Source: Dendrobates tinctorius
Lineage: Eukaryota
Assembly (NCBI RefSeq): GCF_039654945.1
Contig: NW_027361671.1
Coordinates: forward strand, 49,538,001 to 49,602,000
Direction of reading: 5' to 3'
Length of the DNA: 64,000 nt
In this document: one piece after another, positions 1,384-54,239 of the stretch
Layout: every line of letters begins with the position of its first letter
Numbering within the stretch: position 1 is the stretch's first letter
The notes under the pieces: model-generated
Told to the model about the DNA's origin: nothing
Database searches by the model: none
Seen by the model: only the letters and a program-made list of their open reading frames with translations
Position numbers and translations under genes: made by a program

Positions 1384-4300
1384 ATGACTGAAAGAAGGTC
1401 TGCTAGGACAAATAAAGGGGCCCGATACAAGAAATATGTATCCAACGGCCTGCTCGACATTTTATGCAAAAAGGAAAAACCTCGTAAGTGTAAAATGGAG
1501 ACATTAAAATTATTTTACAGTAAAATTCATTTAACGGGAATCTGGTCATTAGATAAATGCTTCCCGAGCTGTAGGCAGCATGAATCAGAGCTTGGCGGCA
1601 CCGCTGCAGCCAGATAGGTTTTTCCTGAAATGCTCCGGCAGATTTTCCCTGCACCACTCCTGTTGACTGAAAGGTCTCAAGTGTGTTAGCGAGTGATCTG
1701 TCAGTGACCTGGAGCGAGGACGTGAGAAGCCGGGAAGGTCACCGGAGGGCGACAGGGAAACGGACGGCTCTTTATATATACCATGTGATTTCAAACTCCA
1801 AACTGTTTTTAGAAAAAATCATACCTGGTTGCAGTCCGGCTCAGATTCATGCTACACGTGTTTGGGCACAGAGAATTAAGTGACAGGTTCCCTTTAATAT
1901 GGCATAAGAGCAGCCAGACAAGTGCCGGATTAACAGTTATTTGCTAACATCAATATACCTAGTAAAATAGATATTTTTTAGAAAAATGGAACAGCACATC
2001 ATTTAGTTAGGTTGAGAAAGGCTCATGTGAGGCGAAACGTCTCCAAGCCACGTGGGCCAAATAAAGTCCACTACATGTTTTTGGTAATGATGGAGCGCTG
2101 CTTCATTTTTTTTTTTACTTCTAGTAAAACAGATAGAAATTACTGATAAAGGGAGAAAACCTTCTGGAAGAAAGTCCAAGTTAAAATATATACCCCAAAT
2201 CAGCTGCTATCATTTCCTAAGCAGAAGGTTCTCCTAATATTCCATTTTCTCCACTTTTAGCTGTTCGGCGCATTAAACCAACAAATAGAAATGAGAGAAG
2301 AACCTTAAAATATTTCCTGGAACAGGCAGCAGTACTGCCTGAGATTGGAGAGCCGGGTACAGAAATAGAATGCACACTGTACTCCATGTAAGTCACCATT
2401 TGTATAATGCTACACCTGCTGTTACAGAGGGTTCATTACCTTATAAGTCCATGTATCAAGGAGAGATGGGGTTTTGTCTTTTAGGGAAGGTGCCATCAAA
2501 AAAAAAAATTTTCTCAACAACTAAAAAAATTTGAAGTCTTAATGTTTTCATTTAAAAAAAATATCAGTTGTTTTTAATCAAATATGAAAAATAATTTAAA
2601 AAGGGTCACACATTTCACTACTGCTCCCATGGAAGTGGACGGCGTGAGGTAACATATTACACCACTGCTCCCATAGAAGTGAAAGGAGTGGGGTCATGCA
2701 TTAGATCACTGTTCCCATAGATGTGGACAGAACGGAGATGCACATTACACCACTGCTCCCATAGAAGTCGACAGAGCGTAAATCACTCCACCGATATAAT
2801 TGGAAGGAGGGGATCACGCATTACACCACTGCTCCCTTAGAAATGTGTAACCATGGTCTGTCCACTTCTATGGGAGCAGTGCTGTAATAGAATAGATAAC
2901 TAAAATAAACGTCCTGTAAATATATAATTTAACAAGCCCTCTACATATAACAAACTTGCACCTTTTAGTGCCTTTCATGGAGCACTTAAAATGACATGGC
3001 GCCCCCTCACCCTTTTTACTGTAACCAGCAAGGGTAAAGCAGAGAGCCGGGGGCTTAGATTATCAGACTGGGAAGGTCCCTGGTTATTGGGCCCTTCCTA
3101 GCCTAAAAATACAAGCCCCAGAATTGGTGCATCACATTAGATGTGCCAATTCTGAAGCTTTGCCTAGCTCTTCCAAAAAACCCATGCAAGTCCTATTTCG
3201 TCCACAAAGGGAAACCTAGAAAAAATAAACAAGAGAAATAAAGACAAGACATTCTCCCTCATTCACCAATTTATTAGAAAATAAAAAGTTCCCATGCAGG
3301 TCCACCGTAATCCATGACTCTCCCACGACTATCCCAGATTCTGACGTCTAAAGGCTATGGAGCCTCATTCAGAGAATAAAGATTCATAGGCTGTAGCAGC
3401 AGCCTCTCTGGGACCCGCTGAAATCATTGAGAAGCGGCGGCTGTGATGAGCAGTGACGTCAGTAACTACACCACTCATGAGAGTGGCTGATCCTCTGTAT
3501 AATGGTCCCATATAGTGCTCCACAGTATAAAGACCTCATATAGTGCACCACAGTATAATTGCGGCTCTACATAGTGCCCTACAGTATACTGGCCCCATAC
3601 AGTGCAATACAGTATACTAGCCCCGTATAGTGCGCTATAGAATAAAGGCCTCATAAAGTGCCCTACAGTATCATGGCCCCATACAGGACCCTACAGTATC
3701 ATGGCCCCATATAGTACCCTACAGTATCATGGCCCCATATCGTGCCCTACAGTATCATGGCCCCATATAGTACCCTACAGTATCATGGCCCCATACAACG
3801 TTCCACAGTATAATGGCTCCTTATAGTGCCCTACAATATAATGGCCCCATATAGTGCCTGACAGTATAATGGCCCTATATGGTGCCCTACGGTATAGTGG
3901 ACCCATATATTACCCTACAATACAATAGCTGCATATAGCACCCTACAGTAAAATAACTCCATATAGTGCCCTAGAGCATGATGGCCTCATGTAGTGACCT
4001 ACAGTAAAATATCCCCATATAGTGCGCCATACTATAAGGTGCCCCACAGTATAATGGCCCTATAGTGTGTTCTACAGTACAATGGTCTCATATAGTGCTC
4101 CACAGTATAATGTGATTGTCTAATCTAAATAGAGAGGAGATTGAGGCCGAGCTTAAGAAACCAGCAAGAAAATTTAAGGAGCCCAGATCACCCGACCCGT
4201 GAGTAACGTGATGGCACCAGCCATACACTAAAAGTTAAACTTAATATATTATTTTTTGTCTGTTAATCACGTACAATGTCAGGACTTCGTTCTGTTTTTG

Positions 4301-4408
4301 TTGTTTTTTTACAGGCCAGAAAATCAAAACGAGGAGATTGACTCAGGGACAGCAGCTGATACGAGCAGCCAGCCGCCCCCCAAGAAAAAAGCGAAAAAGA
4401 ACCATTAG
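1384..4408 (+). CDS. Spliced 128-aa putative nuclear protein, copy 1; join(1384..1483,2261..2387,4133..4198,4315..4408)
   Basis: ATG with A at -3. Donors CTC|gtaagt, CAT|gtaagt, CCC|gtgagt; acceptors ccacttttag, ctaaatag, ttttttacag. Phases 1/2/2 join to 387 nt: MTERRSARTNKGARYKKYVSNGLLDILCKKEKPPVRRIKPTNRNERRTLKYFLEQAAVLPEIGEPGTEIECTLYSIEEIEAELKKPARKFKEPRSPDPPENQNEEIDSGTAADTSSQPPPKKKAKKNH*. Confidence 0.75.
1980..2115 (+). mobile_element. Short Penelope-like remnant in intron 1 with a degenerate hammerhead-type motif
   Basis: TTGAGAA-A-GGCTC-atgt-GAGGC-GAAACGTC at 2012-2041; weakly inverted flanks; also at ~15785 and ~33575. Confidence 0.4.
3500..4110. repeat. 28-bp minisatellite in intron 2 (ccctacagtatcatggccccatatagta)
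   Basis: Period 28 (3661, 3689); unit number varies between copies (~17500-18230, ~35170-35980). Confidence 0.9.
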
Positions 4409-4691
4409 TGATGAGGTAATATAGAGCGCCGATATCTTAATTTTTGTATGGGTGAGGAGAGAGGAGGATCACTATATATTAGCCCTTTTAGATTGATAAT
4501 TGGGGAATATAGTCTCATAAAAATATTACAAGTATAAACATAAACAGAAAAGGTATTTCACAGAAGACAGATTGGGAATGAGGAAACACAAAATAATGAC
4601 ATGCTACATATTGTAACAAAGACTGACACATCACAGTGGTCAGGAATGGTACAAAGAACCATAATTATATATTTTTCTTTTCTTGTTTTAG

Positions 4692-6925
4692 ATGGGGACT
4701 GCCTCCACCATTCACCTACAACCAACCCCCCAAAATGAGCTCCAACCCTTTACTACCTACCAGCCCCCATCTATGTCGAACTACCATCAACTAACTTCAC
4801 CTACCACTAATTCCTACCTCATGCAAGCAAATATGACCAGCTACCATCATCAACGACTAAGAAGTGCCACGTATTTCCTCAAGATGTGACCACCAGCCAG
4901 CAACATCTTTGGCCGTCCTCCACCCGCCAGCAACATCTGTGGCCGTCCTCCACCCGCCAGCAACATCTGTGGCCGTCCTCCACCCGACAGCAACATCTGT
5001 GGCCGTCCTCCACCCGACAGCAACATCTGTGGCCGTCCTCCACCCGCCAGCAACATCTGTGGCCGCCCTCCACCCGCCAGCAACATCTGTGGCCGCCCTC
5101 CACCCGCCAGCAACATCTGTGGCCGCCCTCCACCCGCCAGCAACATCTTTGGCCGCCCTCCACCCGCCAGCAACATCTGTGGCCGCCCTTCACCCGCCAG
5201 CAACATCTTTGGCCGTCCTCCACCCGCCAGCAACATCTTTGGCCGTCCTCCACCCGCCAGCAACATCTTTGGCCGTCCTCCACCCGCCAGCAGCATCTTT
5301 GGCCGTCCTTCACCCGCCAGCAACATCTTTGGCCGTCCTCCACCCGCCAGCAACATCTTTGGCCGTCCTCCACCCGCCAGCAACATCTTTGGCCGTCCTC
5401 CACCCGCCAGCAACATCTTTGGCCGTCTTCCACCCGCCAGCAACATCTTTGGCCGTCCTCCACCCGCCAGCAACATCTTTGGCCGTCCTCCACCCGCCAG
5501 CAACATCTTTGGCCGTCCTCCACCCGCCAGCAACATCTTTGGCCGTCCTCCACCCGCCAGCAACATCTTTGGCCGTCCTCCACCCGCCAGCAACATCTTT
5601 GGCCGTCCTCCACCCGCCAGCAACATCTTTGGCCGTCCTCCACCCGCCAGCAACATCTTTGGCCGTCCTCCACCCGCCAGCAACATCTTTTGGCCGTCCT
5701 CCACCCGCCAGCAACATCTAGTGCAATCCTCCACCGGTCAGCAACATCTAGGGCCATCCTCCACCCGCCAGTAACATCTAGGGCGATCCTTCACCCGCCA
5801 GCAACATCTAGGGCTATCCTCCACCCGCCAGCAACATCTAGGGCTATCCTCCACCCGCCAGCAACATCTAGGGCTATCCTCCACCAGCCAGCAACATCTA
5901 GGGTTATCCTCCACCCGCCAGCAACATCTAGGGCTATCCTCCACCCGGCAGCAACATCTAGGGCCATCCTCCACACGCCAGCAACATTTAGGGCTATCCT
6001 CCACCCGCCAGCAACATCTAGGGCTATCCTCCACCCGCCAGCAACATCTAGGGCTATCCTGCACCGGCCAGCAACATCAAGGGCTATCCTCCACCTGCAA
6101 GCAACATCTAGGGCTATCCTCCACCCGCCAGCAACATCTAGGGCTATCCTCCACTCGCCAGCAACATCTAGGGCTATCCTCCACCCGCCAGCAACATCTA
6201 AGGCTATCCTCCACCCGCCAGCAACATCTAGGGCTATCCTCCACCCGCCAGCAACATCTAGGGCTATCCTCCACCCGCCAGCAACATCTAGGGATATCCT
6301 CCACCCGCCAGCAACCTCAAGGGCTATCCTCCACCCGAAAGCAACATCTACAGCTATCTTCCACGAGTCAGCAACATCTAGGGATATTCTACACCCGCCA
6401 GCAACATCTAGGGCTATCCTCCACCCGCCAACAACATCTAGGGCTATCCTCCACCAGCCAGCAACATCTAGGGTTATCCTCCACCCGCCAGCAACATCTA
6501 GGGCTATCCTCCACCCGGCAGCAACATATAGGGCCATCCTCCACACGCCAGCAACATCTAGGGCTATCCTGCACCGGCCAGCAACATCAAGGGCTATCCT
6601 CCACCTGCAAGCAACATCTAGGGCTATCCTCCACCCGCCAGCAACATCTAGGGCTATCCTCCACTCGCCAGCAACATCTAGGGATATCCTCCACCCGCCA
6701 GCAACATCTAAGGCTATCCTCCACCCGCCAGCAACATCTAGGGCTATCCTCCACCCGCCAGCAACATCTAGGGCTATCCTCCACCCGCCAGCAACCTCAA
6801 GGGCTATCCTCCACCCGCCATCAACATTTAGGTCTAGCCTTTACCCGCCAGCAACATCTACGGCTATTCTTTACCCGCCAGCAACATCTACGGCTATGTA
6901 TTAAACAATTGAAAAAATGTACTGT
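4692..6925 (+). other. Putative terminal 3'UTR exon of gene copy 1 (equivalents start at 18821 and 36571)
   Basis: Donor GAG|gtaat at 4416, 7 nt after the stop. Strong acceptor ttttcttttcttgttttag before 4692. ATTAAA at 6900-6905 followed by a T/G-rich tract (20158 and 37399 in the other copies). Confidence 0.55.
4891..6895. repeat. 30-bp minisatellite, ~67 units (cacccgccagcaacatctttggccgtcctc / cacccgccagcaacatctagggctatcctc)
   Basis: Exact 30-bp periodicity; one 1-bp insertion at ~5691. Confidence 0.98.
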
Positions 6926-7016
6926 ATTATAGTTTTAGTTTAAAAAAAAAAAAAAAAAAATTTATACCAGGAAAACAAAAAACATGATAATTTTAAAAGG
7001 TTTGCTATTTTCGACT

Positions 7017-9929
7017 TTAGACCACTTACTGCCAGCTGACAGAATAGTACGTCAGCTGGCAGTGTCCCACGCTTTGAGGTGGGCTGCGGTGGTGAGCCCA
7101 ACTCAAAGCCCCAACATGTCAGCTGTTTTCAACAGCTGACATGTGCCCGCAATAGGAGCGAACAGAAACGCGATCCGCCCACGCCTATTAATTAGTTAAA
7201 TGCTGCTGTCAAACTCTGACAGGGGGCATTTAACTGTATTTCCGGACGCTGGTCTGGAAACACACACAGCGACGACCCCTGTCACGTGATCGGCGGGGTC
7301 ATCGCTGCGCTGCCATCACAACCAGAGGTCTCATCGAGACGTCTATGGCTGTTGATGGCAGATTACTATGAGCGCCACTCTGTGGTTGGCACTCATAGCA
7401 AGTCTGTAATTCTGCTGCATAGAGGTGATCTGAGCATCACCTCTACACTCCCTGACAGAAGTTATGTCGCTTATCCATGTTATGTAAATAAAAGCTTATA
7501 ACCGGACGTTAAATTCATCCATTGGTTGTATAAAATATTCTTTTGAAAGCTGAAACCATCTCAAACGTGGTTTAGGTTAAAAAAATAATTTGGCATGAAT
7601 GCAGAAATATTGATCATTTAATGGACACAGAATGGTCAGATTTTGGCAAGACAAAAGTTTTGTCGGCCACAGAAAGTTATGTGATATTCAAACAAATAAT
7701 TAACTTAAAATACAAATATATGTTGCATTACATTGGTGAATGAAGTTGTGGTGCTATTAGAGTCATATGTAATATTTAGTGTGACTTCCATGAGCATGAA
7801 GGGCTGCATCCATGCGATTCAACAATGATTCATACAATTTATTAATGAAGTCATCAGGAATAGCAAAGAATGCAGTCTTTCAAGCCTTTCAGAGTTCATC
7901 TAGATTCTTTGCTTTTGTCTTCCCAGCTTCCTCTTTCATCCTACCCCAAACATGCTCAATGATGTTCATGTCTAGTGACTGGGCTGGCCCGTCATTGAGC
8001 ACCTTGATCTTTTTTGCCTGGATGAACTTTGTTGTAGAGATGGAGCATCATCCTGCTGCAGAATTTGACCCCTTTCATTATTTGGAATATAAGAGGTAGC
8101 TAGTACTTCTTGATATTTTAGGCTACTGAGATTGCCTTTCACCTTGCAAATGTTTCGCACCCCCCAAATAATGAATCTAACCCCAGACTATGATCTTTTC
8201 ACCAACAAATTTAACTGTTTTACTGTTTTCTGGGTGTACTTTGGATCCATATGGACTCCTGTAGGTCTCCTGCAGTAGTTGCGGCAGCTGTGATGTAATT
8301 CTACTGAAGAGTCATCAAAGAATTCCACCTTCTGCCACTTTACCAGCGTCCATCTGTTTACCAGGCTGTGGGACTTTGCAAATGCCCCACAGTTTTTTAT
8401 TTGCCCTTTATTTAGTGCTGGCTTCTGGGGACTGATTCGACCATGGAGACCCTTTTGAGACAGAATCCTACAAACTGCTCTAGTTGACTCAGGGACTTGA
8501 CGTGACCAGGCCTGTTGGAGCTCTGCTGCAGTGGAAGAGGGGCTTGCTTTGGATTTCCTAAACAAGCAGCGTTCCTCTTGAGCAGCTGTCTTGCGGGGTC
8601 TGCCGAACCTGGGCTTGTCAAACATCTCCAGTCTCTTCGAATCTTTTTTTAATTCTTTGTACTTGACACTGAGACACATTTAAGGTGCCAGCCACCTCTG
8701 CAGTGGATCTGATCTTCAGCCTCTTGATAATCCAGGCTTTGGTCACAGGCTGGATTTTTGGCATGTTCTCAGAGCTCAAGTTGCAGCTCAAGTGAAGGTC
8801 TGGGGTGCTGGGTTTCTTTTTATACACACCCACTAATTAACAGATCATTTACTAAGCACAGGTGAGGATGTAAACTAGGATTGGGTGTATTGTATGACCA
8901 GGCGACAAAACTTTTGTCTTGCCAAAATCTGACCATTCTGTGTCCATTAAATGATTCTGCATTGATGCCAATTTATTTTCTTAACCGAAACCACATTTCG
9001 GAAGGTTTCAGATTTCAAAAGAATAAATTATATAACCAATGGATGAATTTAACGTCAGGTTATAAGCTTTTATTTACCTAACATGGATAAGCGCCATAAC
9101 TGCTGTCAGGGAGTGTATGTAGCAGAGGCGATCGCGCTATGGCAGCTTCTAACCTCCTATAAACACTATTGAAGCATGCCAAAAGTAAAAAAAAAAAAAA
9201 AAGGTTTAAAAATATAAAAATGAAAAAACAAAACAAATTCAAATGACCCCCCTTTCGCTGCATTCAGAATTGCCCGATCTATCAATAAAAAAAAAAAAAA
9301 AAAAAACCTGATCGCTAAACAGCGTAATGATAAAAAAGCCAGAATTAATAGAATTACTTTTTTTGGTTGCCGCGACATTGCGTTAAATGCGATAACGGGC
9401 AATTAAAAGAACGAATCTGCACAAAAGTGCTATCGTTAAAGACGTCAAATCAGTACGCAAAACATAAACCAACACCCAACCCGAGATAACAAAAATGGAG
9501 ACGCTAAGGGTCTCGGAAAAATGCAAAAAATTTTTTTGGCAAAATTTGGAATTCTTTTTAGAAAAATTTGGAATTTTTTTTCACCACTTAGATAAAAGAG
9601 AACCTACACATGCTTGGTGTCTATGAACTTATAATGACCTGGAAAATCATAATTGCAGGTCAGTTTTAGCATTTAGTGAACCTAGCAAAAAACCCAAACA
9701 ATAAACAAGTGTGGGATTGCACTTTTTTGCAATTTCACTGCACTTGGAATTTTTTTTCCTGTTTTCGAGTACACGACATGGTAAAATCAATGGCTTTGTT
9801 CAAAAGTACAACTCGTCCCGCAAAAAAAAAGCCCTCACACAGTCATATTGACGGAAAAATAAAAAAGTTATGGCTTTGGAAAGTAGGGGAGCGAAAAATA
9901 GAAAAAAGCTCCGGTCATGAAGGAGTTAA
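7017..9929. mobile_element. Non-autonomous TTAA-target (piggyBac-type) MITE interrupted by Tc1; equivalents at ~20265-22912 and ~37511-38855
   Basis: Right end catgaagg(a/g)gTTAA; degenerate left end; shares blocks (gtcagctg..cagctgac hairpin) in reverse orientation with the element from 59332. Confidence 0.7.
7446..9115 (-). mobile_element. Tc1-like transposon with decayed transposase
   Basis: TA|CACTCCCTGACAG...CTGTCAGGGAGTG|TA with long TIRs; minus-strand fragments MPKIQPVTKAWIIKRL, GRPRKT, ILQQDDAP. Confidence 0.93.
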
Positions 9930-10059
9930 ACATGGAAGCAGGTGGCGAAATTTGCCTTGGAAACCTGCCATCTCCCAAATGGGCTTTAGACAGGAGGCAC
10001 TGCAGGCTGTATCCTACATGACTGGCAATAGATATGCAGGACTGCAGGCTGAATGACAC

Positions 10060-10432
10060 ATAATGAGATTAGATACATTGCTCTGTGAGCTGTATCACAC
10101 ATGATGGGATTATATTCACGGCTGTGAGCTGTATCACACATGATGGGATTATATTCACGGCTCTGTGAGCTGTATCACACATGATGGGATTATATTCACG
10201 GCTCTGTGAGCTGTATCACACATGATAGGATTAGATACATGGCTCTGTGAGCTGTATCACACATGATGGGATTAGATACATGGCTCTGTGAGCTGTATCA
10301 CACATGATGGGATTATATTCACGGCTCTGTGAGCTGTATCACACATGATGGGATTATATTTGCGGCTCTGTGGGATTTATCACACATGAATGGATTATAT
10401 ACGTGGCTCTCTGCGCTGTATCACACATGATG
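10060..10432. repeat. 41-bp minisatellite (gctctgtgagctgtatcacacatgatgggattatattcacg); also ~23050-23460 and ~39124-39645
   Basis: Period 41; reverse-complement relative of 54240-55395. Confidence 0.92.
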
Positions 10433-11608: not shown

Positions 11609-11780
11609 TATCTATGATACCTCTTTCCATGGTCTGCATAGAGTATGATACCACAAAAAAATGACAATTAATGATGTTACCACATCCCTCCACCTAAATA
11701 GCATCATGGCTCCACACAATAAGATGGTCACCCCTGCCTCCTACACAGTATGATGGTCACTACAGCCCCCTCACACAATA

Positions 11781-24758: not shown

Positions 24759-27336
24759 CTAGTGTATATACCCTGTAATATTATACTTTCCAAGAAAGGC
24801 ATCCAGTCCCTTCTTAAATATTAGGAGGGAATCACTCATTACAACATCATATGGCAGAGAGTTCCATAGTCTCACTGCTCTTACAGTAAAGAATCCGCGT
24901 CTGTGAGTATGCTTAAACCTTCTTTCCTCCAGACGTAGAGGATGCCCCCTTGTCCCCGTCACAGGTCTAAGAGTAAAAAGATCATTAGAAAGGTCTTGGT
25001 ATTGTCCCCGCATATATTTATACATTGTAATAAGATCACCCCTAAGCCTTGGATTCTCCAAACTAAATAACCCCAAGTGTAATAACCTGTCTTGGTATTG
25101 CAGACCCCCTAGTTCCCTAATAACCTTGGTCGCTCTTCTCTGCACCCGCTCCAGTTCAGCTATGTCTTTCTTATACACCGGAGACCAGAACTGTACACAG
25201 TATTCTAAGTGTGGTTTCACTAGTGACTTATATAGAGGTAAACTTATGTTGTCCTCATGAGCATCTATGCCTCTTTTAATGCATCCCATTATTTTATTTG
25301 CCTTTGCAGCAGCTGCCTGACACTGGCCACTAAATGTGAGTTTATCGTCCACCCATACACCCAGGTCTTTTTCAGTGACTATTTTGCCCAGTGTTTTACA
25401 ATTAAGCACATAATTATACATCTTGTTTGTTCTACCCAAGTGCATGACCTTACATTTATCCCCATTAAAGCTCATTTGCCATTTATCAGCCCAAGCTTCT
25501 AGTTTACATAAATCCTCCTGTAATATAAAATTGTCCTCCTCTGTATTGATTACCCTGCAGAGTTTAGTGACATCTGCAAATATTGAAATTCTACTCTCTA
25601 TGCCCCCTACAAGGTCATTAATAAATATGACCCCTGTGGTACCCCACTGCTAACCGTGACCCAGTCCGAGTGTGCTCCATTAATAACCACCCTTTGTTTC
25701 CTATCCCTGAGCCAGCTCTTAACCCACCTACACAGATTTTCCCCTATCCCCATTGTTCTCATTTTATGTATCAACCTTTTGTGTGGCACCGTATCAAAAG
25801 CTTTTGAGAAGTCCATGTACACCACGTCCACTGCATTCCCTTGGTCCAGTCCAGAACTTACCTGTTCATAAAAGCTTATCAGATTAGTCTGACAGGAACG
25901 GTCCCTTGTAAACCCATGTTGATATTGGGTCATAAGGTTATTCTTCTCCAGATACTCCAGTATAGTATCTCTTAGAAAACCCTCCAGGATTTTACCCACA
26001 GTTGAGGTTAAACTTACTGGCCTATAATTTCCAAGTTCAGTTTTTGTCTCCTTTTTGAATATTGGCACCACATTTGCTATACGCCAGTCCTGTGGTACAG
26101 ACCCTGTTATTATGGAATCTTTAAAGATTAAAAATAATGGTCTATCTATGACTGTGCTTAATTCCTGCAGTACTCGGGGGTGTATCCCAACCGGGCCCGG
26201 GGATTTGTCAATTTTAGTGACTTTTAGACGCCACTGTACTTCCTGCTGGGTTAAGCAGGTGACATTTAACGGAGAATTTTTATCCCTGATCACTTTATCC
26301 GTCATGGGATTTTCTTGTGTAAATACTGTTGAAAAAAAGTCATTTAGCATATCGGCTTTTTCCTCATCCTCATCCACCATTTCACCCAGACTATTTTTAA
26401 GGGGACACTATTATTTTTTAGCTTCTTGCTATTTATGTAGTTAAAGAATATTTTGGGATTATTTTTACTTTCTCTGGCAATGAGTCTCTCTGTCTCAATC
26501 TTTGCAGCCTTGATTTGCTTTTTACAGAATTTATTTCATTTTCTGTATTTATTTAATGCCTCATCATTACCTACTTGCTTTAATTCTCTAAATTCCCAGT
26601 TAATTGCACCAAGATCATCTCTCATCCGTTGGAAATTTGCCTTCCTGAAGTTTAGTGTCCTTGTAACCCATCTACTACACATCTTATTAAAGGATACATG
26701 AAAACTTATTAATTTGTGATCACTATTACCCAAGTGACCCTCAACCCTTACATTTGATATGCGGTCTGGCCTGTTGGTTAATATTAGGTCTAGCAGTGCC
26801 CCCCCTCTTGTTGGGTCCTGAACCAGTTGTGAAAGGTAATTGTCTCTCATAGTAGTCAAAAACCTATTACCTTTGCTGGAACTGCAGGTTTCGGTTCCCC
26901 AATGTATTTCAGGGTAGTTGAAGTCCCCCATAATAATGACTTCTCCTTGAGTCGCAGCTTCATCTATTTGCTTTATGAGGATATTCTCTGTTGCTTCCAT
27001 TATTTTTGGAGACTTATAACAAACCCCTATCATTAATTTATTATTTTTCCCCCCTCCCCTTATCTCCACCCACAGTGACTCTACATTTTCATTAGATTCA
27101 TATATATTATCACGAAGGATGGGTTTTAAGGATGATTTTACATATAAACACACACCTCCCCCTTGCTTATTTGTTCGGTCATTTCTGAACAGACTATAGC
27201 CCTGTAAATTAACCGCCCAGTCGTGGCTCTCGTCCAGCCATGTCTCAGATATCCCCACCATGTCATAATTATGCTCCAACAACATTAACTCCAATTCCTC
27301 CATTTTGTTGGAGAGACTTCTGGCATTAGTATACAT
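24759..27336 (-). pseudogene. CR1 ORF2 (AP endonuclease plus reverse transcriptase), broken by deletions/frameshifts
   Basis: MYTNARSL, GISETWL, MGDFNYP, GNSDH; NYRPVSLTS, DFSKAFD, SGVPQGS; C-terminal TRGHPLRL. Confidence 0.95.
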
Positions 27337-27500
27337 GCACTTTATGTATCTCTCTGTACCTCTATTCTTTCTTAAATTATTAACTGTTCTAACCCAGCCT
27401 CCATGCCACCCCCACCCCCATTGTCATTATTTGTGCCCAGGTCTCTATCTGCACTGTCTTCCCCTCCTATAAAAGGAATACCCTCCCCCCCATCCCTAGT

Positions 27501-28206
27501 TTAAACACTCCTCCAACCTTCTAGCCATTTTCTCCCCCAGCACAGCTGCACCCTCCCCATTGAGGTGCAGCCCGTCCCTAGCGTAGAACCTGTAGCCAAC
27601 TCAGAAGTCGGCCCAGTTCTGCAGGAACCCAAACCCCTCCTTCCTACACCAATTCCTGAGCCACTTATTAACCTCCCTAATCTCCCGTTGCCTCTCTGGT
27701 GTGGCAAGTGGTACAGGAAGTATTTCCGAAAATACCACCTTGGAGGTCCTTGCTTTAAGCTTACAGCGTAATTCCCTGAAATCATCTTTAAGGACCTTCC
27801 ACCTACCTCTAACTTTGTCATTTGTGCCAATGTGCACCATGACCGCTGGATCCTCACCAGCCCCTCCCAGTAATCGGTCAACCCGATCAGCGATGTGTTG
27901 GACTCGAGCTCCAGGTAGGCAGCACACCGTTCGACGATCCCTATCTTTGTGACAGATTGCCCTATCTGTTCCCCTAATAATTGAGTCTCCCACTACCAGA
28001 ATCTGTCTGGCCTGCCCTGCTCTCCTATTTCCCCCCTTACTGGAGCAGACACGCCTCCGGCTTTCAGAGGACATGCCTTGCTGCAGCAGTGCTACTCCTG
28101 CACTAACACTCCCCTCATCTGTCAACTTAGCAAACTTATTGGGGTGTGCCAGATCAGGACTAGCCTCCCTGGTGCTCTTCCCTCTACCCCGCCTTCTAAC
28201 TGTCAC
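27501..28206 (-). pseudogene. CR1 ORF1 SGNH/GDSL esterase-like domain, truncated and interrupted
   Basis: VVGDSIIR, CLPGA, VHIGTND motifs. Confidence 0.88.
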
Positions 28207-28231
28207 CCAGCTAGCTGCTTCATTGTCCTGC

Positions 28232-29328
28232 TGTCATGATCTGACAGTTTTAAATAGCACTGGGTGAACTTTTTTTTACTTTGGAAAGTTCCAAGGTGTC
28301 TTGACTGTCCCCGGTGGTGGTTAGTGGTATTGCACTTTAGGTTTTTGTGCACTTAATTATGTATCAGGTGTGACACCCTATAAAGGTGTGCTAGGGGTGT
28401 GCAATCACTGCCTGTGATATTGTGAGATTGTTCACTTTGAGTTGGAGAGCCTGGTGGAAGGATGGCGCTGAAGAGGAGTCCTGCGCAGCTCAGCCAGGGG
28501 GGAAGAGTGTCAGCGGTGGTGTCTGGACGAAGGGCTGGCATGGCGTGGTGGGGTCGCAGTGATGGAGTCAGCGGGAAGTGTCTACATGGTCTGGTGGAGT
28601 GGCTACTATGGAGAGTGGCACTCACCATGTGGGACTTGGCCGCTGAGCTGGACTCAAGCATGCTCGACTTTGTGTCAGAAGCTGAACTCATCCTTGGGAC
28701 TCTGGTACTAAGCAGCTGTACCTGGTGGTGGACTCTGCTCCAAGACTGCACTAAGGTGAAGGATCCTGTAATGGTGATGGATCCGGGTGGAGGAGAAGAC
28801 GCACGCAGGTGGTGGGCTCTGTTGCTAGGAGCGCACACAACAGAGCAAAGCTAAGTGGTGTTTCCCCTGTATTGTCTCTTTCCTCATGTGTGTTATTAGT
28901 GCAGTGGTGGGATTAGTCTCCGCACCGACCCATTCCCTAGTGAGGGTTTAGGGTCAGGGTGAGCAAGGGCGTTAAGGTACGCGTGCGGCGACAGGTGCGG
29001 AGCCTGTTTAGAGAATGTAAGGAGTGCAGGGACACTGGCTCAGGGGAGCTTAGGAGGTCTCCACGTCCCCCATTCCCTATCGCAGGGCCCACCATTGTTT
29101 AAGTTACCCAGGTTCCCCCTTTATTATTTAAATTCGCCTTTCTGGAGGCGGGGTTTCCAGATTTTATGCATAACGTGTAATTCCCAAATTCGCCAGGTGG
29201 AGGCGGCGTATCCACCTGCACGTTTTATTATTTAAATGCGCCCCACTGGAGGCGGTGTATCCAGGGTCACGTGTGTTATGGGTCCGCCTTGCGGTATCAT
29301 CTGCATCCTGACACACGTGACCATGACA
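28232..29328. mobile_element. Solo LTR inserted in the CR1 5' end
   Basis: TGTCATG...CATGACA termini; 5-bp TSD CCTGC at 28227-28231 and 29329-29333. Confidence 0.88.
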
Positions 29329-29594
29329 CCTGCAGCACGTGTACGGGCACAACGAGTGTACCAGTGGTCCTTTGTGGAAGCACGACCTGCTAAGTCCCAG
29401 ACATATGACTTATTACAGCTAGTATCAAAGATACCTCTTTCCATGGTCTGCATAGAGTATGATACCACAAAAAAATGACAATTAATGATGTTACCACATC
29501 CCTCCACCTAAATAGCATCATGGCTCCACACAATAAGATGGTCACCCCTGCCTCCTACACAGTATGATGGTCACTACAGCCCCCTCACACAATA

Positions 29595-31188
29595 CAGTGG
29601 GTAAGGAAATAAGGAAAGTATTCAGAACCCTTAAAATTTTTCACTCTGTTTCATTGCAGCCATTTGGTAAATTCAAAAAAGTTCATTTTTTTCTCATTAA
29701 TGTACACTCTGCACCCCATATTGACTGAAAAAAACCCAGAAATGTAGACATTTTTGCAAATTTATTAAAAAAAGAAAAAGTAGTTAAATATTACATGGTC
29801 ATAATTATTCAGACCCTTTGCTCAGTATTGAGTAGAAGCACCCTTTTGAGCTAGTAAAGCCATGAGTCTTCTTGGGGATAATGCAACAAGTTTTTCACAC
29901 CTGGATTTAGGGATCCTCTGCCATTCATCCTTGCAGATCCTCTCCAGTTCCGTCAGGTTGGATGGTGAGCGTTGGTGGACAGCCCTTTTCAGGTGTCTGC
30001 TGAGATGCTCAATTGGGTTTAGGTCAGGGCCCAGGCTGGGCCAGTCAAGAATGGTCACAGAGTTGTTCTGAAGCCACTCCTTTATATTTTTAGCCGTGTG
30101 CTTAGGGTCAGTCTCTTGTTAGAAGGTGAACCTTCGGTCAAGTCTGAGGTGCAGAGTACTACGGAAAAGGTTTTCATCCAGGATACTCTGTACTTGGCCG
30201 CATTCATGTTTTCTTGAATTGCAGTCGTCCAGTACCTGCAGCTGAAAAACACCCCCATAGCATGATGCTGCCACCACCACATTTCACTGCTGGAATTGAA
30301 TTGGGCAGGTGATGAGCAGTGCCTGGTTTTCTCCACATACCGCTTAGAATTATCAAGAAAAAGTTATAACTTATTTCTCATAGTCTGGGAGTCGTTCATG
30401 TGTTTTTCAGCAAACTATGCAGGCTTTCATATATCTTTCACTGAAGAGAGGCTTCCGTTGGGCCAGTCTGCCATAAAGGCCTGACTGTTGTAGGGATGAA
30501 GTGATAGTTGACTTTGTGGAACTTTCTCCCATCTCCCTACTGCATCTGTGGAGCTCAGCTACAGTGATCTTGGAGTTCATCTTTACCTCTCTCACCAAGG
30601 CTCTTCTCTCCCACAATTGCTCAGTTTGGCTGAAAGACCAGGTCTAGGAAGACTTTTGATGGTCCCAAACTTTTTCCATTTAAGGATTATGGAGGCCACT
30701 GTGCTTATAGGAACCTTGAGTACTGCAGAAATTCTTTTGTAACCTTGGCCAGCTTTGTGCCTTATCACATTTCTGTCTCTGAGCTCCTTGGCCAGTTCCT
30801 TTGACCTCATGATTCTCATTTGGTCTGACATGCACTGTGAGCTGTGAAGTACTATACAGACAGGTGTGTGCCTTTACAAATCAAGCCCTATCAGTTTAAT
30901 TAAGCACAGCTAGACTCCAATGAAGAAGTAGAACCATCTCAAGGAGGATCACAAGGAAATGGACATCATGTGACTTAAGTATGAGTGTCTGAGCAAAGGG
31001 TTTGAATACTTCTGACCATGTGATATTTCAATTTTTTTTTTTTAATTAATTTGTTATTTTTCAGTCAAGATGGGGTGCAGAGTATACATTAATGAGAAAA
31101 CAATGAACTTTTTTGAGTTTACCAAATGGCTGCAATGAAACAAAGAGTAAAAATGTAAAAGGGGTCTGAATACTTTCCATACCCACTG
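29595..31188 (-). mobile_element. Tc1-like transposon (duplicate of 11781-13365)
   Basis: Same TIRs and TA site. Confidence 0.95.
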
Positions 31189-32938
31189 TATAATATCCAC
31201 CACAACCTCACAGCATATTGTCCACCACAGACTCCTCACACATGATGATCTCCACAGCCCGCCACACAATATGATGGTTAACGCACAGCCTTCCACACAG
31301 TACGATAGTCACCACACACAATACAATGGCCCTACAACAGCCCTCTATATAATATGATGGTCCCCCACAGTATAATAGTCCCCCCACATAGTATGATGGT
31401 CCCGTACAGCTCTAATTCAGTGTCATGGTTCCCCACACCCCCCAAATAGTATGATGGTCCCCCCACAACCACAATACAATACGATGGTGCCCCAATACAG
31501 TACGATGGTCTGGGAGAGACCATGCCACAATATATTATGATGGTCTCCCACAGTCCTAATACAGTATGATGATCACCATAGCCCCCTATATAGTATGACA
31601 GTCCTCCCAAAGGCTCCTATATAGTATGATGGCCCCCCACAGGCACCAATACAGTACCATGGTTTCCCATAATCCACCACAAAATATGATTGTCCCCCCA
31701 CATACTCTTATATAGTATGATGGGACCCCACCAGGCCCCTTTATAGTATGATGGCTTCACACAGTTTTCCATATATTATGATTGCCCCCTATATAGTATG
31801 ATGGTTCGCAAGCAGGCCCTTATCTAGTATCAAGGTCCTCCACGGCCCCAATACAGTACGATGGTCTGAACACAGGCCCCTATATAGTACGGTGGTCCCC
31901 AGAGCCCCAATACAGGATAGAAGCATACTGCAGCCTGCAAGAGTAAGTGACGGAGTACGGAGCTAGCGGCTCTGTGCTCCGTCACTGCTATTAACAGTAC
32001 CAACGAATGGACAACGCCAATATAGTTAACAAAGTCGCAAAAGATGCAGATCGGCACATCTGGCGTTTGCCAGAATGGCCAGATGGAAAAGCATCATCGG
32101 CCTGGTAGACCTGCATGCTATTTTCCTTCTTTAAATTTAGCACACTGACAGCTTTCAAAACGAGTTGTTCAGTAGTGAATAACCCCTTTAAAAACAGACA
32201 TGCTGTCAACTGGATACAAACATGATGCAAAAAAAGGCCTAATTAACAATACTTCCTATAAATACCTCAAATCAACAAAGAAAAGGGAAGTATACACCAT
32301 TTAATAGAAAAGACAAAAAGTTTATTAAATAGTACTAATTTTACAATTAAAATGCAAAAACAGAGATATAAAATGCAAAGCAGCTCCCAGCAGCAAGGTA
32401 TCTTTTCTATTAAATGTTGGATACAAACATGATTGTTGGTCTATGGTGGCTGCACACGTGTATTTTTTATGTCAGAGAGCAGAGTAATAACACAAACTGC
32501 ATTAAATGATTGCGCTCCATGTTGCTATGACAGTCAAATGTCCAGCCAATCAGATGCCAGCATATAGTGGAAGATACAATATTTTCCATTATAGGGGGAG
32601 GGTATTATTATATAGATGTTTTATTATGCATTATTTTGATGAAGAAACATGTGAAAGTCAATAAATTCCTCCTAACATAATGCAATATATCATTATTAGT
32701 AATGATTGTATCCAAAAATAGCATTCGAAGACAGGTGCTCTTTAATATGTGAATACGACCCTACAGCAAGTAGTTCTGCCCAGTGAGCGACGTCATCACT
32801 AACTGCCGTATTATGTAATCATCCAAACATTCTAACTCTATAGCAACGAAACCGACCGCTACTAACAGTTTTAGTGACAGTGAAAAAGCGACACTTCATA
32901 TTCACTTTCTGGGAAAACCGAAATCACTATCAGCTATA

Positions 32939-35900
32939 ATGACTGAAAGAAGGTCTGCTAGGACAAATAAAGGGGCCCGATACAAGAAATTTGTATCCAA
33001 CGGCCTGCTCGAGATTTTATGCAAAAAGGAAAAACCTCGTAAGTGTAAAATGGAGACATTAAAATTATTGTACAGTAAAATTCATTTAACGGGAACCTGG
33101 TCATTAGATAAATGCTTCCCGAGCTGTAGGCAGCATGAATCAGAGCTTGGCGGCACCGCTGCAGCCAGATAGGTTTTTCCTGAAATGCTCCGGCAGCTTT
33201 TCCCTGCACCACTCCGGTTGACTGAAAGGTCTCAAGTGTGTTAGCGAGTGATCTGTCAGTGACCTGGAGCGAGGACGTGAGAAGCCGGGAAGGTCACCGG
33301 AGGGCGACAGGGAAACGGACGGCTCTTTATATATACCATGTGATTTCAAACTCCAAACTGTTTTTAGAAAAAATCATACCTGGTTGAAGTCGTGCAGTCC
33401 GGCTCAGATTCATGCTACACGTGTTTGGGCACAGAGAATTAAGTGACAGGTTCCCTTTAATATGGCGTAAGAGCAGCCAGACAAGTGCCGGATTAACAGT
33501 TATTTGATAACATCAATATACCTTGTAAAATAGATATTTTTTAGAAAAATGGAACAGCACATCATTTAGTTAGGTTGAGAAAGGCTCATGTGAGGCGAAA
33601 CGTCTCCAAGCCATGTGGGCCAAATAAAGTCCACTACATGTTTTTGGTAATGATGGAGCGCTGCTTCATTTTTTTTTTACTTCTAGTAAAACAGATAGAA
33701 ATTACTGTTAAGGGGAGAAAACCTTCTGGAAGAAAGTCCAAGTTAAAATATAAACCCCAAATCAGCTGCTATCATTTCCTAAGCAGAAGGTTCTCCTAAT
33801 ATTCCTTTTTCTCCACTTTTAGCTGTTCGGCGCATTAAACCAACAAATAGAAAGGAGAGAAAAACCTTAAAATATTTCCTGGAACAGGCAGCAATCCTCC
33901 CTGAGATTGGAGAGCCGGGTACAGAAATAGAAAGCACACTGTACTCCATGTAAGTCACCATTTGTATAATGCTACACCTGCTGTTACAGAGGGTTCATTA
34001 CCTTATAAGTCCATGTATCAAGGATAGATGGGGTCTTGTAGTTTTAGGGAAGGTGTCATCAAATAAAAATTTTTCTCAACAACTAAAAAAATTTGAAGTC
34101 TTAATGTTTTAATTTTAAAAAAATATCAGTTGTTTTTAATAAAATATGAAAAATAATTTAAAAAGGGTCACACATTTCACTACTGCTCCCATGGAAGTCG
34201 ACAGAGCGTAAATCACTCCACCGATATAATTGGAAGGAGGGGATCACGCATTACACCACTGCTCCCTTAGAAATGTGTAACCCTGGTCTGTCCACTTCTA
34301 TGGGAGCAGTGCTGTAATAGAATAGGTAACTAAAATAAAGGTCCTGTAAATATATAATTTAACAAGCCCTCTACATATAACAAACTTGCACCTTTTAGTG
34401 CCTTTCATGGAGCACTTAAAATGACGTGGCGTCCCCTCACCCTTTTTTCTGTAACCAGCAAGGGTAAAGCAGACAGCTGGGGGCTTAGATTATCAGACTG
34501 GGAAGGTCCCTAGTTATTGGGCCCTTCCTAGCCTAAAAGTACAAGCCCCAGAATTGGTGCATCACATTAGATGTGCCAATTCTGAAGCTTTGCCTAGCTC
34601 TTCCAAATTGATCTGGTGTGGTGGCAATTGGGGTAATGGTAGTTGGGGGTTGATAACAGCTGTGAATTGTCAAAAATCACATCTGGCATCAAGTCCTGTG
34701 GTTAGTAATGGAAAGGTGACTATCAGACACTGCTCATTATTAACACACTAATTAATGAAAGAGAAAAAACAAACAAACATTTTTTTCTTTATTTGAATAA
34801 AGACTCCCTCGACTCTTTTCCGGTTTCCATATTTATTTTTGAAAAGAAAAACCCATGCAAGTCCTATTTCGTCCACAAAGGGAAACCTAGAAAAAATAAA
34901 CAAGAGAAATAAAGACAAGACATTCTCCCTCGTTCACCAATTTATTAGAAAATAAAAAGTTCTCATGCAGGTCCACCGTAATCCATGACTTTCCCACGAC
35001 TATCCCAGATTCTAAAGTCTAAAGGTTATGGAGCCTCGTTCAGAGAATAAAGATTCATAGGCTGTAGCAGCAGCCTCTCTGGGACCCGCTGAACTCCTTG
35101 AGAAGCGGCGGCTGTGATGAGCAGTGACGTCAGTAACTACACCACTTATGAGAGTGGCTGATCCTCTGTATAATGGTCCCATATAGTGCTCCACAGTATA
35201 AAGACCTCATATAGTGCACCACAGTATAATTGCGGCTCTATATAGTGCCCTACAGTATACTGGCCCCATACAGTGCAATACAGTATACTAGCCCCGTATA
35301 GTGCGCTATAGAATAAAGGCCTCATAAAGTGCCCTACAGTATCATGGCCCCATAGAGTACCCTACAGTATCATGGCCCCATATAGTACCCTACAGTATCA
35401 TGGCCCCATATAGTACCCTACAGTATCATGGCCCCATATAGTACCCTACAGTATCATGGCCCCATATCGTGCCCTACAGTATCATGGCCCCATATAGTAC
35501 CCTACAGTATCATGGCCCCATATCGTGTCCTACAGTATCATGGCCGCATATCATGCCCTACAGTATCATGGCCCCATATCATGCCCTACAGTATCATAGC
35601 CCCATATAGTACCCTACAGTATCATGGCCCCATAAAGTACCCTACAGTATCATGGCCCCATACAACGCTCCACAGTATAATGGCTCCTTATAGTGCCCTA
35701 CAATATAAAGGCCCCATATAGTGCCTGACAGTATAATGGCCCTATATGGTGCCCTACAGTATAGTGGACCCATATAGTAACCTACAATACAATAGCTCCA
35801 TATAGCACCCTACAGTAAAATGACTCCATATAGTGCCCTACAGCATGATGGCCTCATGTAGTGACCTACAGTAAAATATCCCCATAAAGTTCCCCATTCT

Positions 35901-36279
35901 ATAAGGTGCCCCACAGTATAATGGCCCTATAGTGTGTTCTACAGTACAATGGTCTCATATAGTGCGCCACAGTATAATGTGATTGTCTAATCTAAATAGA
36001 GAGGAGATTGAGGCCGAGCTTAAGAAACCAGCAAGAAAATTTAAGGAGCCCAGATCACCCGACCCGTGAGTAACGTGATGGCACCAGCCATACACTAAAA
36101 GTTAAACTTAATATATTATTTCTTGTCTGTTAATCACGTACAATGTCAGGATTTCGTTCTGTTTTTTTTTTCTTTTGTTTTACAGGCCAGAAAATCAAAA
36201 CGAGGAGATTGACTCAGGGACAGCAGCTGATACGAGCAGCCAGCCGCCCCCCAAGAAAAAAGCGAAAAAGAACCATTAG
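32939..36279 (+). CDS. Spliced 128-aa putative nuclear protein, copy 3; join(32939..33038,33823..33949,36000..36065,36186..36279)
   Basis: Same exon lengths and splice sites, intact. Differs from copy 1 by Y18F, D25E, N44K, R47K, V58I, C71S. Confidence 0.75.
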
Positions 36280-45509: not shown

Positions 45510-47104
<1,595 letters not shown>

Positions 47105-54235: not shown

Positions 54236-54239
54236 CTGT

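What the first reader, a model, noticed from the sequence alone, without database searches (positions are those of the whole stretch)
1384..36279. Hidden, tandemly amplified family of small spliced nuclear-protein genes, intact in all three copies
Seen: four short exons (100/127/66/94 nt) with canonical splice sites and compatible phases join into a 128-aa ORF in each unit. None of the three copies has an indel or premature stop in the 387 nt, whereas the flanks carry indels and private TE insertions. The protein has a basic N-terminus, an acidic middle and a C-terminal SV40-like PPPKKKAKK. The stop lies 7 nt before the last junction, so the mRNA would escape the 50-nt NMD rule. Inference: a lineage-specific ampliconic gene family that I cannot assign to a named gene.
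Basis: partly seen in the sequence, partly recalled or inferred. Interest (0 to 1): 0.9.

Follow-up and report, generated by a model that had tools for sequence, protein, structure and literature searches.

The report
Frog-only small nuclear protein genes
Three tandem copies of a small five-exon gene really are here; it belongs to an unstudied, fast-evolving family found only in poison frogs and close relatives, encodes a floppy nuclear-type protein with a histone-binding-like motif, and a sister species already lists it as "uncharacterized".

Summary
Four exons with GT-AG sites join into an intact 128-aa ORF in all three tandem units.

It is a real gene family with no name and no recognisable domain. 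A 128-aa model at 91% identity is annotated in Ranitomeya variabilis (LOC143793800). Five paralogues (116-182 aa, about 40-45% identity) exist there, and others in Anomaloglossus. Rhinoderma models share exon 1 and the exon-5 region. Nothing was found outside these frogs, in Pfam or in PDB.

- **Intactness is weak evidence.** The three copies differ as much in exons as in introns, dN/dS is near 1, and chance intactness has P about 0.06. The gene's reality rests on three motif blocks conserved across paralogues and on shared exon borders.
- **The stop has a simple origin.** The stop 7 nt before the last junction comes from an inferred 4-nt frameshift. The +1 frame reads SDE|MVTA, matching the paralogue tails NSDE|MVTT.
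- **Structure.** The protein is predicted to be disordered.
- **Best guess at function.** The invariant N-terminal RRS[AT]R equals the HMGN core RRSAR, which binds the nucleosome acidic patch. With the C-terminal NLS, this suggests a small chromatin-binding protein. This is inferred only.
- **No RNA evidence** could be obtained.

Interest is moderate.

The parts
1384..1483 (+). Copy A exon 1 (start codon; encodes MTERRSARTNKGARYKKYVSNGLLDILCKKEKP)
   Evidence: tblastn HSPs of annotated paralogues end at this border.
2261..2387 (+). Copy A exon 2 (variable basic linker plus the conserved block TLKYFLEQAAVLPEIGEPGT)
4133..4198 (+). Copy A exon 3 (acidic helix EEIEAELKK...). The matching segment is missing from Anomaloglossus isoform 2 (P0017), which fits skipping of this exon.
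4315..4415 (+). Copy A exon 4. CDS ends at the TAG at 4406-4408 (PPPKKKAKKNH*). The last 9 nt read SDE in the ancestral (+1) frame.
4692..6935 (+). Copy A exon 5, the putative 3' UTR. It starts with the old coding tail MGTAST..., includes a 30-bp minisatellite at 4890-6897 (67 copies), then ATTAAA at about 6901 and an A-run. The 3' end is inferred, not mapped.
15149..15248 (+). Copy B exon 1
16032..16158 (+). Copy B exon 2
18255..18320 (+). Copy B exon 3
18438..18538 (+). Copy B exon 4 (stop ends at 18531)
18821..20195 (+). Copy B exon 5 / 3' UTR. It starts with MVTASTSHLQ, includes the minisatellite at 19019-20152 (38 copies), then ATTAAA.
32939..33038 (+). Copy C exon 1
33823..33949 (+). Copy C exon 2
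36000..36065 (+). Copy C exon 3
36186..36286 (+). Copy C exon 4 (stop ends at 36279; donor GTGATA)
36571..37435 (+). Copy C exon 5 / 3' UTR. It has one extra C in the old coding frame, includes the minisatellite at 36770-37388 (21 copies), then ATTAAA.
228..40735 (+). Tandem array of three head-to-tail units. Approximate spans are A 228-13993, B 13994-31787, and C 31788-40735 (C lacks the last 2.3 kb). The units are 96-97% identical outside their TE insertions.
   Evidence: Self-BLAST.
24545..29341 (-). CR1-like non-LTR retrotransposon (endonuclease, RT and esterase-like ORFs), inserted only in unit B. It explains the 17.8 kb versus 13.8 kb unit length.

Best explanation
**What it is.** Each unit carries a genuine five-exon gene of a taxon-restricted family, seen so far only in hyloid frogs: Dendrobatidae and Aromobatidae, with partial matches in Rhinodermatidae. 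The gene encodes a small, intrinsically disordered protein built from three conserved short motifs:
- an N-terminal M-x-x-RRS[AT]R-x-[NK]K motif;
- a central RTLKYFLEQAAVLPEIG[DE]P-x-T block followed by an acidic helix;
- a C-terminal SKPPPKK[KR]AKK nuclear-localisation-type signal.

**How the three copies arose.** They come from a recent tandem segmental duplication, after the split from R. variabilis. Unit lengths later changed through TE insertion and minisatellite copy-number change.

**Origin of the 128-aa form.** This form is shared with R. variabilis. An inferred 4-nt frameshift right after the NLS created a TAG 7 nt before the exon 4/5 junction. That turned the old last coding exon, with its 30-bp minisatellite, into 3' UTR.

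**Most likely mode of action (inferred, about 0.3).** The protein enters the nucleus via the C-terminal NLS. It docks on the H2A-H2B acidic patch of nucleosomes through the N-terminal RRSAR arginine pair, as HMGN2, Dsup and yeast Dot5 do. The central conserved block and acidic helices would recruit or displace a partner.

**Shown versus inferred.**
- Shown: exon structure, intact ORFs, family membership, motif conservation, predicted disorder, and the frameshift origin of the stop.
- Inferred: transcription in this species, nuclear localisation, nucleosome binding, and any biological role.
For: - **Exons, splice sites and ORFs** are present in all three copies.
- **Annotated relatives exist.** The R. 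variabilis model XP_077136896 is 128 aa and 91% identical. Its gene range is 7465 bp against about 3 kb from start codon to stop here, which suggests UTR exons and hence transcript support. It lies antisense inside a FERM-domain gene. Paralogues and Anomaloglossus members were found.
- **Motifs are conserved.** Invariant columns across 11 proteins (mean column identity 48%) are M1, R4, R5, S6, R8, K11, A57, P60, I62, G63, T67, S116, K122 and K125.
- **Exon borders coincide** with the ends of paralogue tblastn HSPs.
- **Alternative isoforms fit the exon structure.** Isoform P0017 lacks exactly the exon-3 segment. The intron-4 read-through SDEVI*SADILIFVWVRREEDHYILALLD* matches the tail of isoform X1 (P0005).
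- **The frameshift is visible.** The +1 frame across the stop reads SDE, then exon 5 reads MVTA, which equals the paralogue tails NSDE|MVTT and NSDE|VVTT.
- **The old tail is no longer constrained.** Copy C has an extra base in the abandoned tail frame but none in the CDS.
- **Duplication post-dates speciation.** Ten residues differ between R. variabilis and all three copies alike.
- **Disorder is predicted.** AlphaFold2 gives pLDDT 60.8 and pTM 0.17, with only two 8-residue helices.
- **The motif has a documented mechanism.** RRSAR is the segment of HMGN2 resolved on the acidic patch, with R23 and R26 as the main contacts (PMC12487698). Dsup RRSSRLTS and Dot5 RRSARIAT (aa 6-13, also N-terminal) bind the same way, and all three arginines are required (PMC13347269).
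Against: - **No RNA evidence.** The public runs that hold the locus look like DNA, with even depth over introns. The small RNA-labelled run (X4) had no depth over any of the exons. No joint matched any proposed junction.
- **Little sign of selection among the copies.** dN/dS is 0.56-0.84 on 3-9 changes, and exon divergence equals intron divergence for A-B (2.3% vs 2.3%).
- **Fast evolution between species.** About 10% of residues differ from the R. variabilis orthologue, so most of the protein outside the motifs evolves fast.
- **The HMGN comparison rests on a pentapeptide.** In all three validated motifs quoted in the papers read (RRSARLSA, RRSSRLTS, RRSARIAT) the residue after the anchor arginine is L or I. 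In the frog proteins it is T, A, K or P.
- **No model-based match.** No Pfam model, HMGN's included, scored at E <= 10.
- **The structure model is weak.** It rests on only 11 sequences.
Confidence: 0.6

Rival explanations
1. The family is real, but the three copies in this window are simply young segmental duplicates drifting neutrally. At most one is needed, and their intactness reflects lack of time rather than selection.
For: - CDS and non-exon divergence are indistinguishable (10/387 vs 104/3015 variable sites, P = 0.22).
- dN/dS is 0.56-0.84 on very few changes.
- Chance intactness has P of roughly 0.06 (0.11 for no frame-breaking indel times 0.56 for no stop).
- Tandem amplification of many unrelated genes is noted in other windows of this genome.
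Against: - Zero indels were seen where 2.7 were expected (P = 0.068).
- B-C has 3 CDS differences where about 8.4 were expected from the non-exon rate (my Poisson estimate, P about 0.03).
- No change touches RRSAR, LPEIGEPGT or the NLS.
- All eight splice sites of the four coding exons are kept in each copy.
Confidence: 0.2
2. It is a very divergent offshoot of a named vertebrate gene. Candidates are HMGN, BBX/Capicua (suggested in the first reader's other note), or Sororin/CDCA5 (my own recollection of MSGRRTR..., ILPEIWP and PPPEKQKRKKKK stretches). On this view it is not a new family.
For: - The RRSAR pentapeptide is identical to the HMGN core.
- The resemblances to BBX/CIC and to Sororin are recalled from memory only, and they concern 5-12-residue stretches.
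Against: - hmmscan of eight family members (the window's protein and seven relatives) against all 24,736 Pfam-A models found no such family, even at E <= 10.
- A profile search of 1.84 billion representative proteins found only frog members, plus one repeat-inflated midge protein.
- A profile search of PDB sequences gave 0 hits at E <= 10.
- Language-model look-alikes all scored <= 0.65.
Confidence: 0.07
3. It is not a protein-coding gene. The ORF would be a chance or prediction artefact in transcribed repeat-rich DNA, for example a lncRNA or TE-derived sequence propagated by duplication and by automatic annotation.
For:
- The protein is disordered and matches no domain.
- The 3' part of the gene is a minisatellite.
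- The Rhinoderma models read through that repeat region, which looks like annotation noise.
Against: - Three discrete motif blocks are invariant across paralogues that are otherwise only about 40-45% identical, on four different R. variabilis chromosome-scale contigs and in a second family (Aromobatidae).
- The start codon, exon phases and junctions are conserved.
- Independent annotation pipelines (the XP_ RefSeq-style and KAM GenBank-style accessions look like different pipelines) call the same structure.
Confidence: 0.08

Closest known systems
HMGN proteins (HMGN1-5), and the HMGN-like motifs of tardigrade Dsup and yeast Dot5
   Same: - These are small, disordered nuclear proteins.
- The pentapeptide RRSAR is identical to HMGN2 residues 22-26, which sit on the H2A-H2B acidic patch.
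- The motif lies at the extreme N-terminus, as in Dot5 (aa 6-13).
- An acidic region and a lysine-rich NLS-type stretch are present elsewhere in the chain (PMC12487698, PMC13347269).
   Different: - There is no sequence similarity outside five residues.
- The L/I that follows the anchor arginine in RRSARLSA, RRSSRLTS and RRSARIAT is T, A, K or P here.
- No Pfam model, HMGN's included, matches.
- The domain order differs: HMGN has the NLS first and an acidic tail last.
- The family is restricted to a few frog families, whereas the papers read say HMGN is present in all vertebrates.
- Nucleosome binding is untested.
Automatically annotated 'uncharacterized protein' models in frogs: LOC143793800, LOC143769819/20, LOC143810064, LOC143794028 and LOC143785987 (Ranitomeya variabilis), and ACNLHF_008326, _010551 and _024624 (Anomaloglossus baeobatrachus)
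   Same: They are true homologues. Identity is 91% for LOC143793800 and about 40-45% for the others (34-62% in pairwise comparisons among paralogues). They share the start, the exon borders and the three motif blocks.
   Different: - None has a name, a paper or a function (one search found no paper mentioning the six LOC identifiers searched).
- The long subtype carries an extra EEIDAAVALMSLSKNWEE segment and a 16-30-residue tail that the 128-aa subtype has lost.
- The window's genome has at least three tandem copies, where the R. variabilis annotation lists one protein sequence of this subtype.
Tandemly amplified, fast-evolving small nuclear protein gene families of mammals, such as the SPANX or SSX type (comparison from general knowledge)
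   Same: They are lineage-restricted, tandemly duplicated, and encode short, largely disordered proteins with an NLS. They show a high ratio of protein change to silent change.
   Different: There is no homology. Germline-restricted expression, the hallmark of those families, is not known here. Only three copies are documented.

Membership tests
Unnamed frog family (R. variabilis LOC143793800 and paralogues) | Significant full-length sequence similarity to annotated members | tested here: met
   One search gave E = 2.6e-68 (91% identity) to XP_077136896, and 1e-25 to 6e-18 to paralogues. Further members came from the profile searches.
Unnamed frog family (R. variabilis LOC143793800 and paralogues) | Three conserved motif blocks: N-terminal RRS[AT]R..K, central LPEIG.P.T, and C-terminal S.P...K..K | tested here: met
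   The invariant columns in alignment A3 are all present in copies A, B and C.
Unnamed frog family (R. variabilis LOC143793800 and paralogues) | Shared exon borders, including the exon 4/5 junction | tested here: met
   tblastn HSP ends fall on the exon ends. SDE|MVTA across the 4415/4692 junction matches NSDE|MVTT. Paralogue DNA itself could not be fetched.
HMGN family | Match to the HMGN nucleosome-binding domain as a whole (Pfam model) | tested here: not met
   No Pfam-A family scored at E <= 10 apart from unrelated noise, for the window protein and seven relatives.
HMGN-like nucleosome-binding motif (as in HMGN, Dsup, Dot5) | R-R-S-x-R with the three arginines conserved | tested here: met
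   R4, R5, S6 and R8 are invariant in 11 family members. The Rhinoderma models have RRTAR. The motif definition comes from PMC12487698 and PMC13347269.
HMGN-like nucleosome-binding motif (as in HMGN, Dsup, Dot5) | Hydrophobic residue (L or I) right after the anchor arginine, as in RRSARLSA, RRSSRLTS and RRSARIAT | tested here: not met
   The frog proteins have T (window, P0001), A, K, P or I at that position. Only P0016/P0017 have I.
HMGN-like nucleosome-binding motif (as in HMGN, Dsup, Dot5) | Binding to the nucleosome that depends on the acidic patch and on the arginines | not testable with these tools
   This needs EMSA or pull-down with wild-type and acidic-patch-mutant nucleosomes.
   There were no Pfam hits. 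No BBX or CIC protein was among the hits at E <= 1e-3 in 1.84 billion representatives.
Sororin / CDCA5 (recalled resemblance) | Match to the Sororin family model, or the C-terminal Sororin domain | tested here: not met
   No Pfam family was hit, and there were no PDB sequence hits. The resemblance is from memory only and was not tested against real CDCA5 sequences.

The most novel reading that the evidence does not exclude
A frog-restricted, rapidly evolving and locally amplified family of HMGN-like acidic-patch binders. These would be small disordered proteins that compete for the nucleosome acidic patch, perhaps in germline or early-embryo chromatin of these very large, TE-laden genomes. That would make them a vertebrate example of the 'untapped realm' of HMGN-motif proteins proposed in PMC12487698. 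Their near-neutral or positive evolution outside the motifs would hint at a genetic-conflict role.
Probability: 0.2. Interest if true: 0.65.

Novelty: new variant of a known kind. Interest (0 to 1): 0.42.

Why it matters
If the inference holds, this is an independently evolved, taxon-restricted chromatin protein that reuses the RRSAR arginine-anchor motif of HMGN, Dsup and Dot5. That would give a natural test of how little sequence is needed to target the nucleosome acidic patch. It would also give an example of how new nuclear proteins arise and amplify in giant amphibian genomes.

In practice, the finding shows a real gene missing from this genome's protein set. It also explains an odd-looking stop codon as a fixed frameshift that converted a coding exon and its minisatellite into 3' UTR.

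If the motif is not functional, the finding is an ordinary orphan gene family in a tandem duplication. This genome has many such duplications.

Tried and rejected
- **RNA support.** None of the listed joints corresponds to 1483/2261, 2387/4133, 4198/4315 or 4415/4692. This is uninformative, not negative evidence.
- **Domain and fold assignment.** Pfam found only noise. The PDB sequence profile search gave 0 hits. ESM Atlas look-alikes scored <= 0.65. AlphaFold2 predicted disorder, so no fold search was run.
- **Orthologue and paralogue DNA for codon-level selection tests.** It was not retrievable because the assemblies are too large.
- **The Chironomus F-box protein P0008 (E = 4e-8).** Rejected as a repeat-inflated match: six copies of a weak 75-residue similarity, with no N-terminal or NLS motif.
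- **A second ORF starting at the first base of exon 5 (ATG at 4692, 65 codons).** Rejected as a separate cistron. It is the abandoned ancestral tail frame, and copy C has a 1-nt insertion in it.
- **Translation of the 30-bp minisatellite.** All frames are open and the long ORF changes repeat frame midway. Copy number differs threefold between units. I treat it as non-coding.
- **An interferon-type GAAANNGAAA element just upstream of the ATG.** It is canonical only in copy B, and its count in the window is not above chance (3 vs 1 expected; 11 of 100 shuffles reach 3).
- **The BBX/Capicua and Sororin ideas.** See the membership tests.
- **Copy number outside the window.** The depth of about 370 in run X2 could not be calibrated.
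Full report
**1. Observation**

Reading window 1300-4800 and splicing the four stated blocks gives a 387-nt ORF of 128 aa:

MTERRSARTNKGARYKKYVSNGLLDILCKKEKPPVRRIKPTNRNERRTLKYFLEQAAVLPEIGEPGTEIECTLYSIEEIEAELKKPARKFKEPRSPDPPENQNEEIDSGTAADTSSQPPPKKKAKKNH

- The donors are GTAAGT, GTAAGT, GTGAGT and GTAATA. All acceptors are AG preceded by pyrimidine runs.
- The stop TAG (4406-4408) is followed in frame by TGA TGA. The exon then ends at 4415.
- A strong acceptor at 4692 opens a fifth exon.
- BLAST of each exon against the window finds exactly three copies, at 1384, 15149 and 32939, each 95-100% identical.
- All three translate without a stop or indel and keep every splice site.
- Self-comparison shows three head-to-tail units, roughly 228-13993, 13994-31787 and 31788-40735. 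They are 96-97% identical apart from insertions.
- One such insertion, at 24545-29341 in unit B, encodes endonuclease, RT and esterase-like ORFs of a CR1-type retrotransposon.

**2. How much does 'intact in all three' say?**

Not much on its own.

- In a three-way alignment of the gene regions, 10 of 387 CDS sites vary, against 104 of 3015 non-exon sites (2.6% vs 3.45%, P = 0.22).
- There are 21 indel events in the non-exon part, which predicts 2.7 in the CDS. None is seen (P = 0.068). Seventeen of the 21 would break the frame.
- Ten random substitutions leave the ORF intact 56% of the time.
- Nei-Gojobori dN/dS is 0.56-0.84, based on 3-9 changes.
- For A-B, exon and non-exon divergence are both 2.3%.

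The copies are young. Their intactness is only mildly improbable under neutrality, at roughly 0.06.

**3. What shows that it is a gene**

- **An annotated orthologue exists.** A search of 5.8 billion protein clusters finds a 128-aa NCBI model in Ranitomeya variabilis (XP_077136896, LOC143793800) at 91% identity. It also finds paralogues of 142-172 aa at about 44% identity.
- **The family is wider but frog-only.** An exhaustive profile search of 1.84 billion representatives and a second profile search add LOC143785987, LOC143794028 and three Anomaloglossus baeobatrachus proteins. They also add a 241-aa Rhinoderma darwinii model present in five near-identical copies. Beyond these, only one repeat-inflated midge protein (P0008) reached the threshold, and I discount it.
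- **Motifs are conserved.** In an 11-protein alignment with mean column identity 48%, the invariant columns cluster in three blocks: M1/R4/R5/S6/R8/K11, A57/P60/I62/G63/T67 and S116/K122/K125.
- **Exon borders match.** tblastn of the annotated proteins on the window breaks exactly at the proposed exon ends.
- **Alternative isoforms fit.** An Anomaloglossus isoform lacks precisely the exon-3 segment.
- **Transcript support is likely in the sister species.** In R. variabilis the gene spans 7465 bp, against about 3 kb from start codon to stop here. This suggests that UTR exons were annotated from transcripts. That gene lies antisense within a FERM-domain gene.
- **It appears unannotated in this genome.** No protein identical to copies A, B or C is in the collection.

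**4. The stop 7 nt before the last junction**

- In the +1 frame the last nine bases of exon 4 read SDE.
- Exon 5 begins MVTASTSHLQ in copies B and C, and MGTAST in copy A.
- The paralogues end ...KKNSDE|VVTTSNDPLP... (P0002) and ...NSDE|MVTTPNN.. (P0010).
- The 128-aa subtype therefore carries what looks like a 4-nt insertion between AAC (N) and AGT (S). This creates NH-stop.
- The R. variabilis orthologue ends KKNH too, so the change predates the species split.
- The abandoned tail frame runs 65 codons to a TGA just before the minisatellite. Copy C has already gained a 1-nt insertion in it.
- Read-through of the exon-4 donor gives SDEVI*SADILIFVWVRREEDHYILALLD*. This is clearly homologous to the tail of isoform X1 of LOC143769819 (P0005).
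- These matches validate the exon 4/5 junction.

**5. The 3' exon**

- Exon 5 contains a 30-bp minisatellite with 67, 38 and 21 copies in units A, B and C.
- In all three units it is followed by ATTAAA and an A-run.
- All frames of the repeat are open, and the longest ORF switches repeat frame. I read the repeat as 3' UTR.
- The tail of the Rhinoderma models aligns to this region (tblastn E = 1.6e-6). The link between exon 1 and this repeat exon is therefore older than Dendrobatoidea. Whether it is translated there is unclear.

**6. What the protein looks like**

- There is no Pfam family, even at E <= 10, for eight members.
- There is no PDB sequence match.
- There is no convincing language-model neighbour.
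- AlphaFold2 with the family alignment gives pLDDT 60.8 and pTM 0.17, with only two eight-residue helices, at 49-56 and 76-83.
- It is therefore an intrinsically disordered protein made of short linear motifs.

**7. Proposed mechanism**

- **The motif match.** The invariant N-terminal RRS[AT]R equals the RRSAR of HMGN2 (residues 22-26). Cryo-EM resolved this segment on the H2A-H2B acidic patch, with R23 and R26 as the main contacts and S24 as a regulatory phosphosite (PMC12487698).
- **Validated parallels.** Dsup (RRSSRLTS) and yeast Dot5 (RRSARIAT, aa 6-13, also N-terminal) use the same motif, and all three arginines are required (PMC13347269).
- **The reading.** With the SV40-like C-terminal PPPKKKAKK, the simplest reading is a small nuclear protein that docks on the acidic patch. 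It would present its central conserved block (LKYFLEQAAVLPEIGDPxT plus an acidic helix) to a partner.
- **Against it.** The match is five residues long. The hydrophobic residue after the anchor arginine is not conserved here. Nothing was tested biochemically.
- **Probability.** I give this mechanism about 0.3, and the 'real protein-coding orphan family' part about 0.8.

**8. Evolution**

- Ten residues separate the R. variabilis protein from all three copies alike. The triplication therefore post-dates the split, or the copies are homogenised.
- About 10% protein divergence between close species, and dN/dS near 1 among the copies, indicate fast evolution outside the motifs.
- Other notes on this genome list several unrelated tandem arrays. 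Amplification as such is common here.

**9.

Note s1-389155 suggests BBX/Capicua-type motifs. No statistical support was found. At most it is a resemblance of short motifs.

**10. Verdict**

- It overstates two things, namely the weight of intactness and the degree to which the gene is hidden.
- Transcription in this species and any function remain untested.
- Interest is moderate.

Noticed in passing
window 4890-6897, 19019-20152, 36770-37388: A 30-bp C-rich minisatellite sits inside the putative 3' UTR. Its copy number differs threefold between otherwise 96-97% identical units (67, 38 and 21 copies). All reading frames are open. The homologous region is annotated as coding in the Rhinoderma darwinii models.
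   Followed up: partly
window 3497-4025, 17507-18149, 35168-35894: A 28-bp tandem repeat (19-26 copies, 75-81% matches) lies in intron 2 of every unit.
   Followed up: no
window 1290-1383 (and 15055-15148, 32845-32938): Three GAAA-containing repeats lie just upstream of the ATG (CGAAACCGA, GAAAAAGCGA, GAAAACCGAAAT). Copy B has a canonical GAAANNGAAAY (15124-15134) of the interferon-response/IRF type. A possible RFX-like half-site ATGGCAAC is also present. The count is not above chance in the window (3 vs 1 expected).
   Followed up: partly
window 50399-51166 and 53471-54237: Two 770-bp direct repeats at 99% identity lie about 3 kb apart and bracket the most GC-rich part of the window (GC 0.60). 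This looks like a young, short LTR element.
   Followed up: no
window 41215-42542 with N gap 41958-42138: A long (TCTA)n microsatellite is interrupted by an assembly gap, directly after the end of the third unit. A 23-bp tandem repeat (43 copies) follows at 42545-43537. The gap was not filled or examined.
   Followed up: no
window 8188-8679(-), 12003-12860(-), 45867-46899(+), 56300-59408(+): TE fragments. Three are Tc1/mariner-type transposase fragments or copies. One is an L1-like element with ORF1, endonuclease and RT.
   Followed up: no
run X2 laid on window 400-4885: A run from a second organism (about 95% identical contigs) covers the whole unit, introns included, at an even word depth of about 370. 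TE parts reach thousands. Without a single-copy reference depth, it is unclear whether this reflects high copy number of the unit in that species.
   Followed up: no
R. variabilis locus of LOC143793800: The orthologous gene lies antisense inside a 680-aa FERM-domain gene (FERM_N/M/C plus FA). Whether the window lies in an intron of the same host gene was not checked.
   Followed up: no
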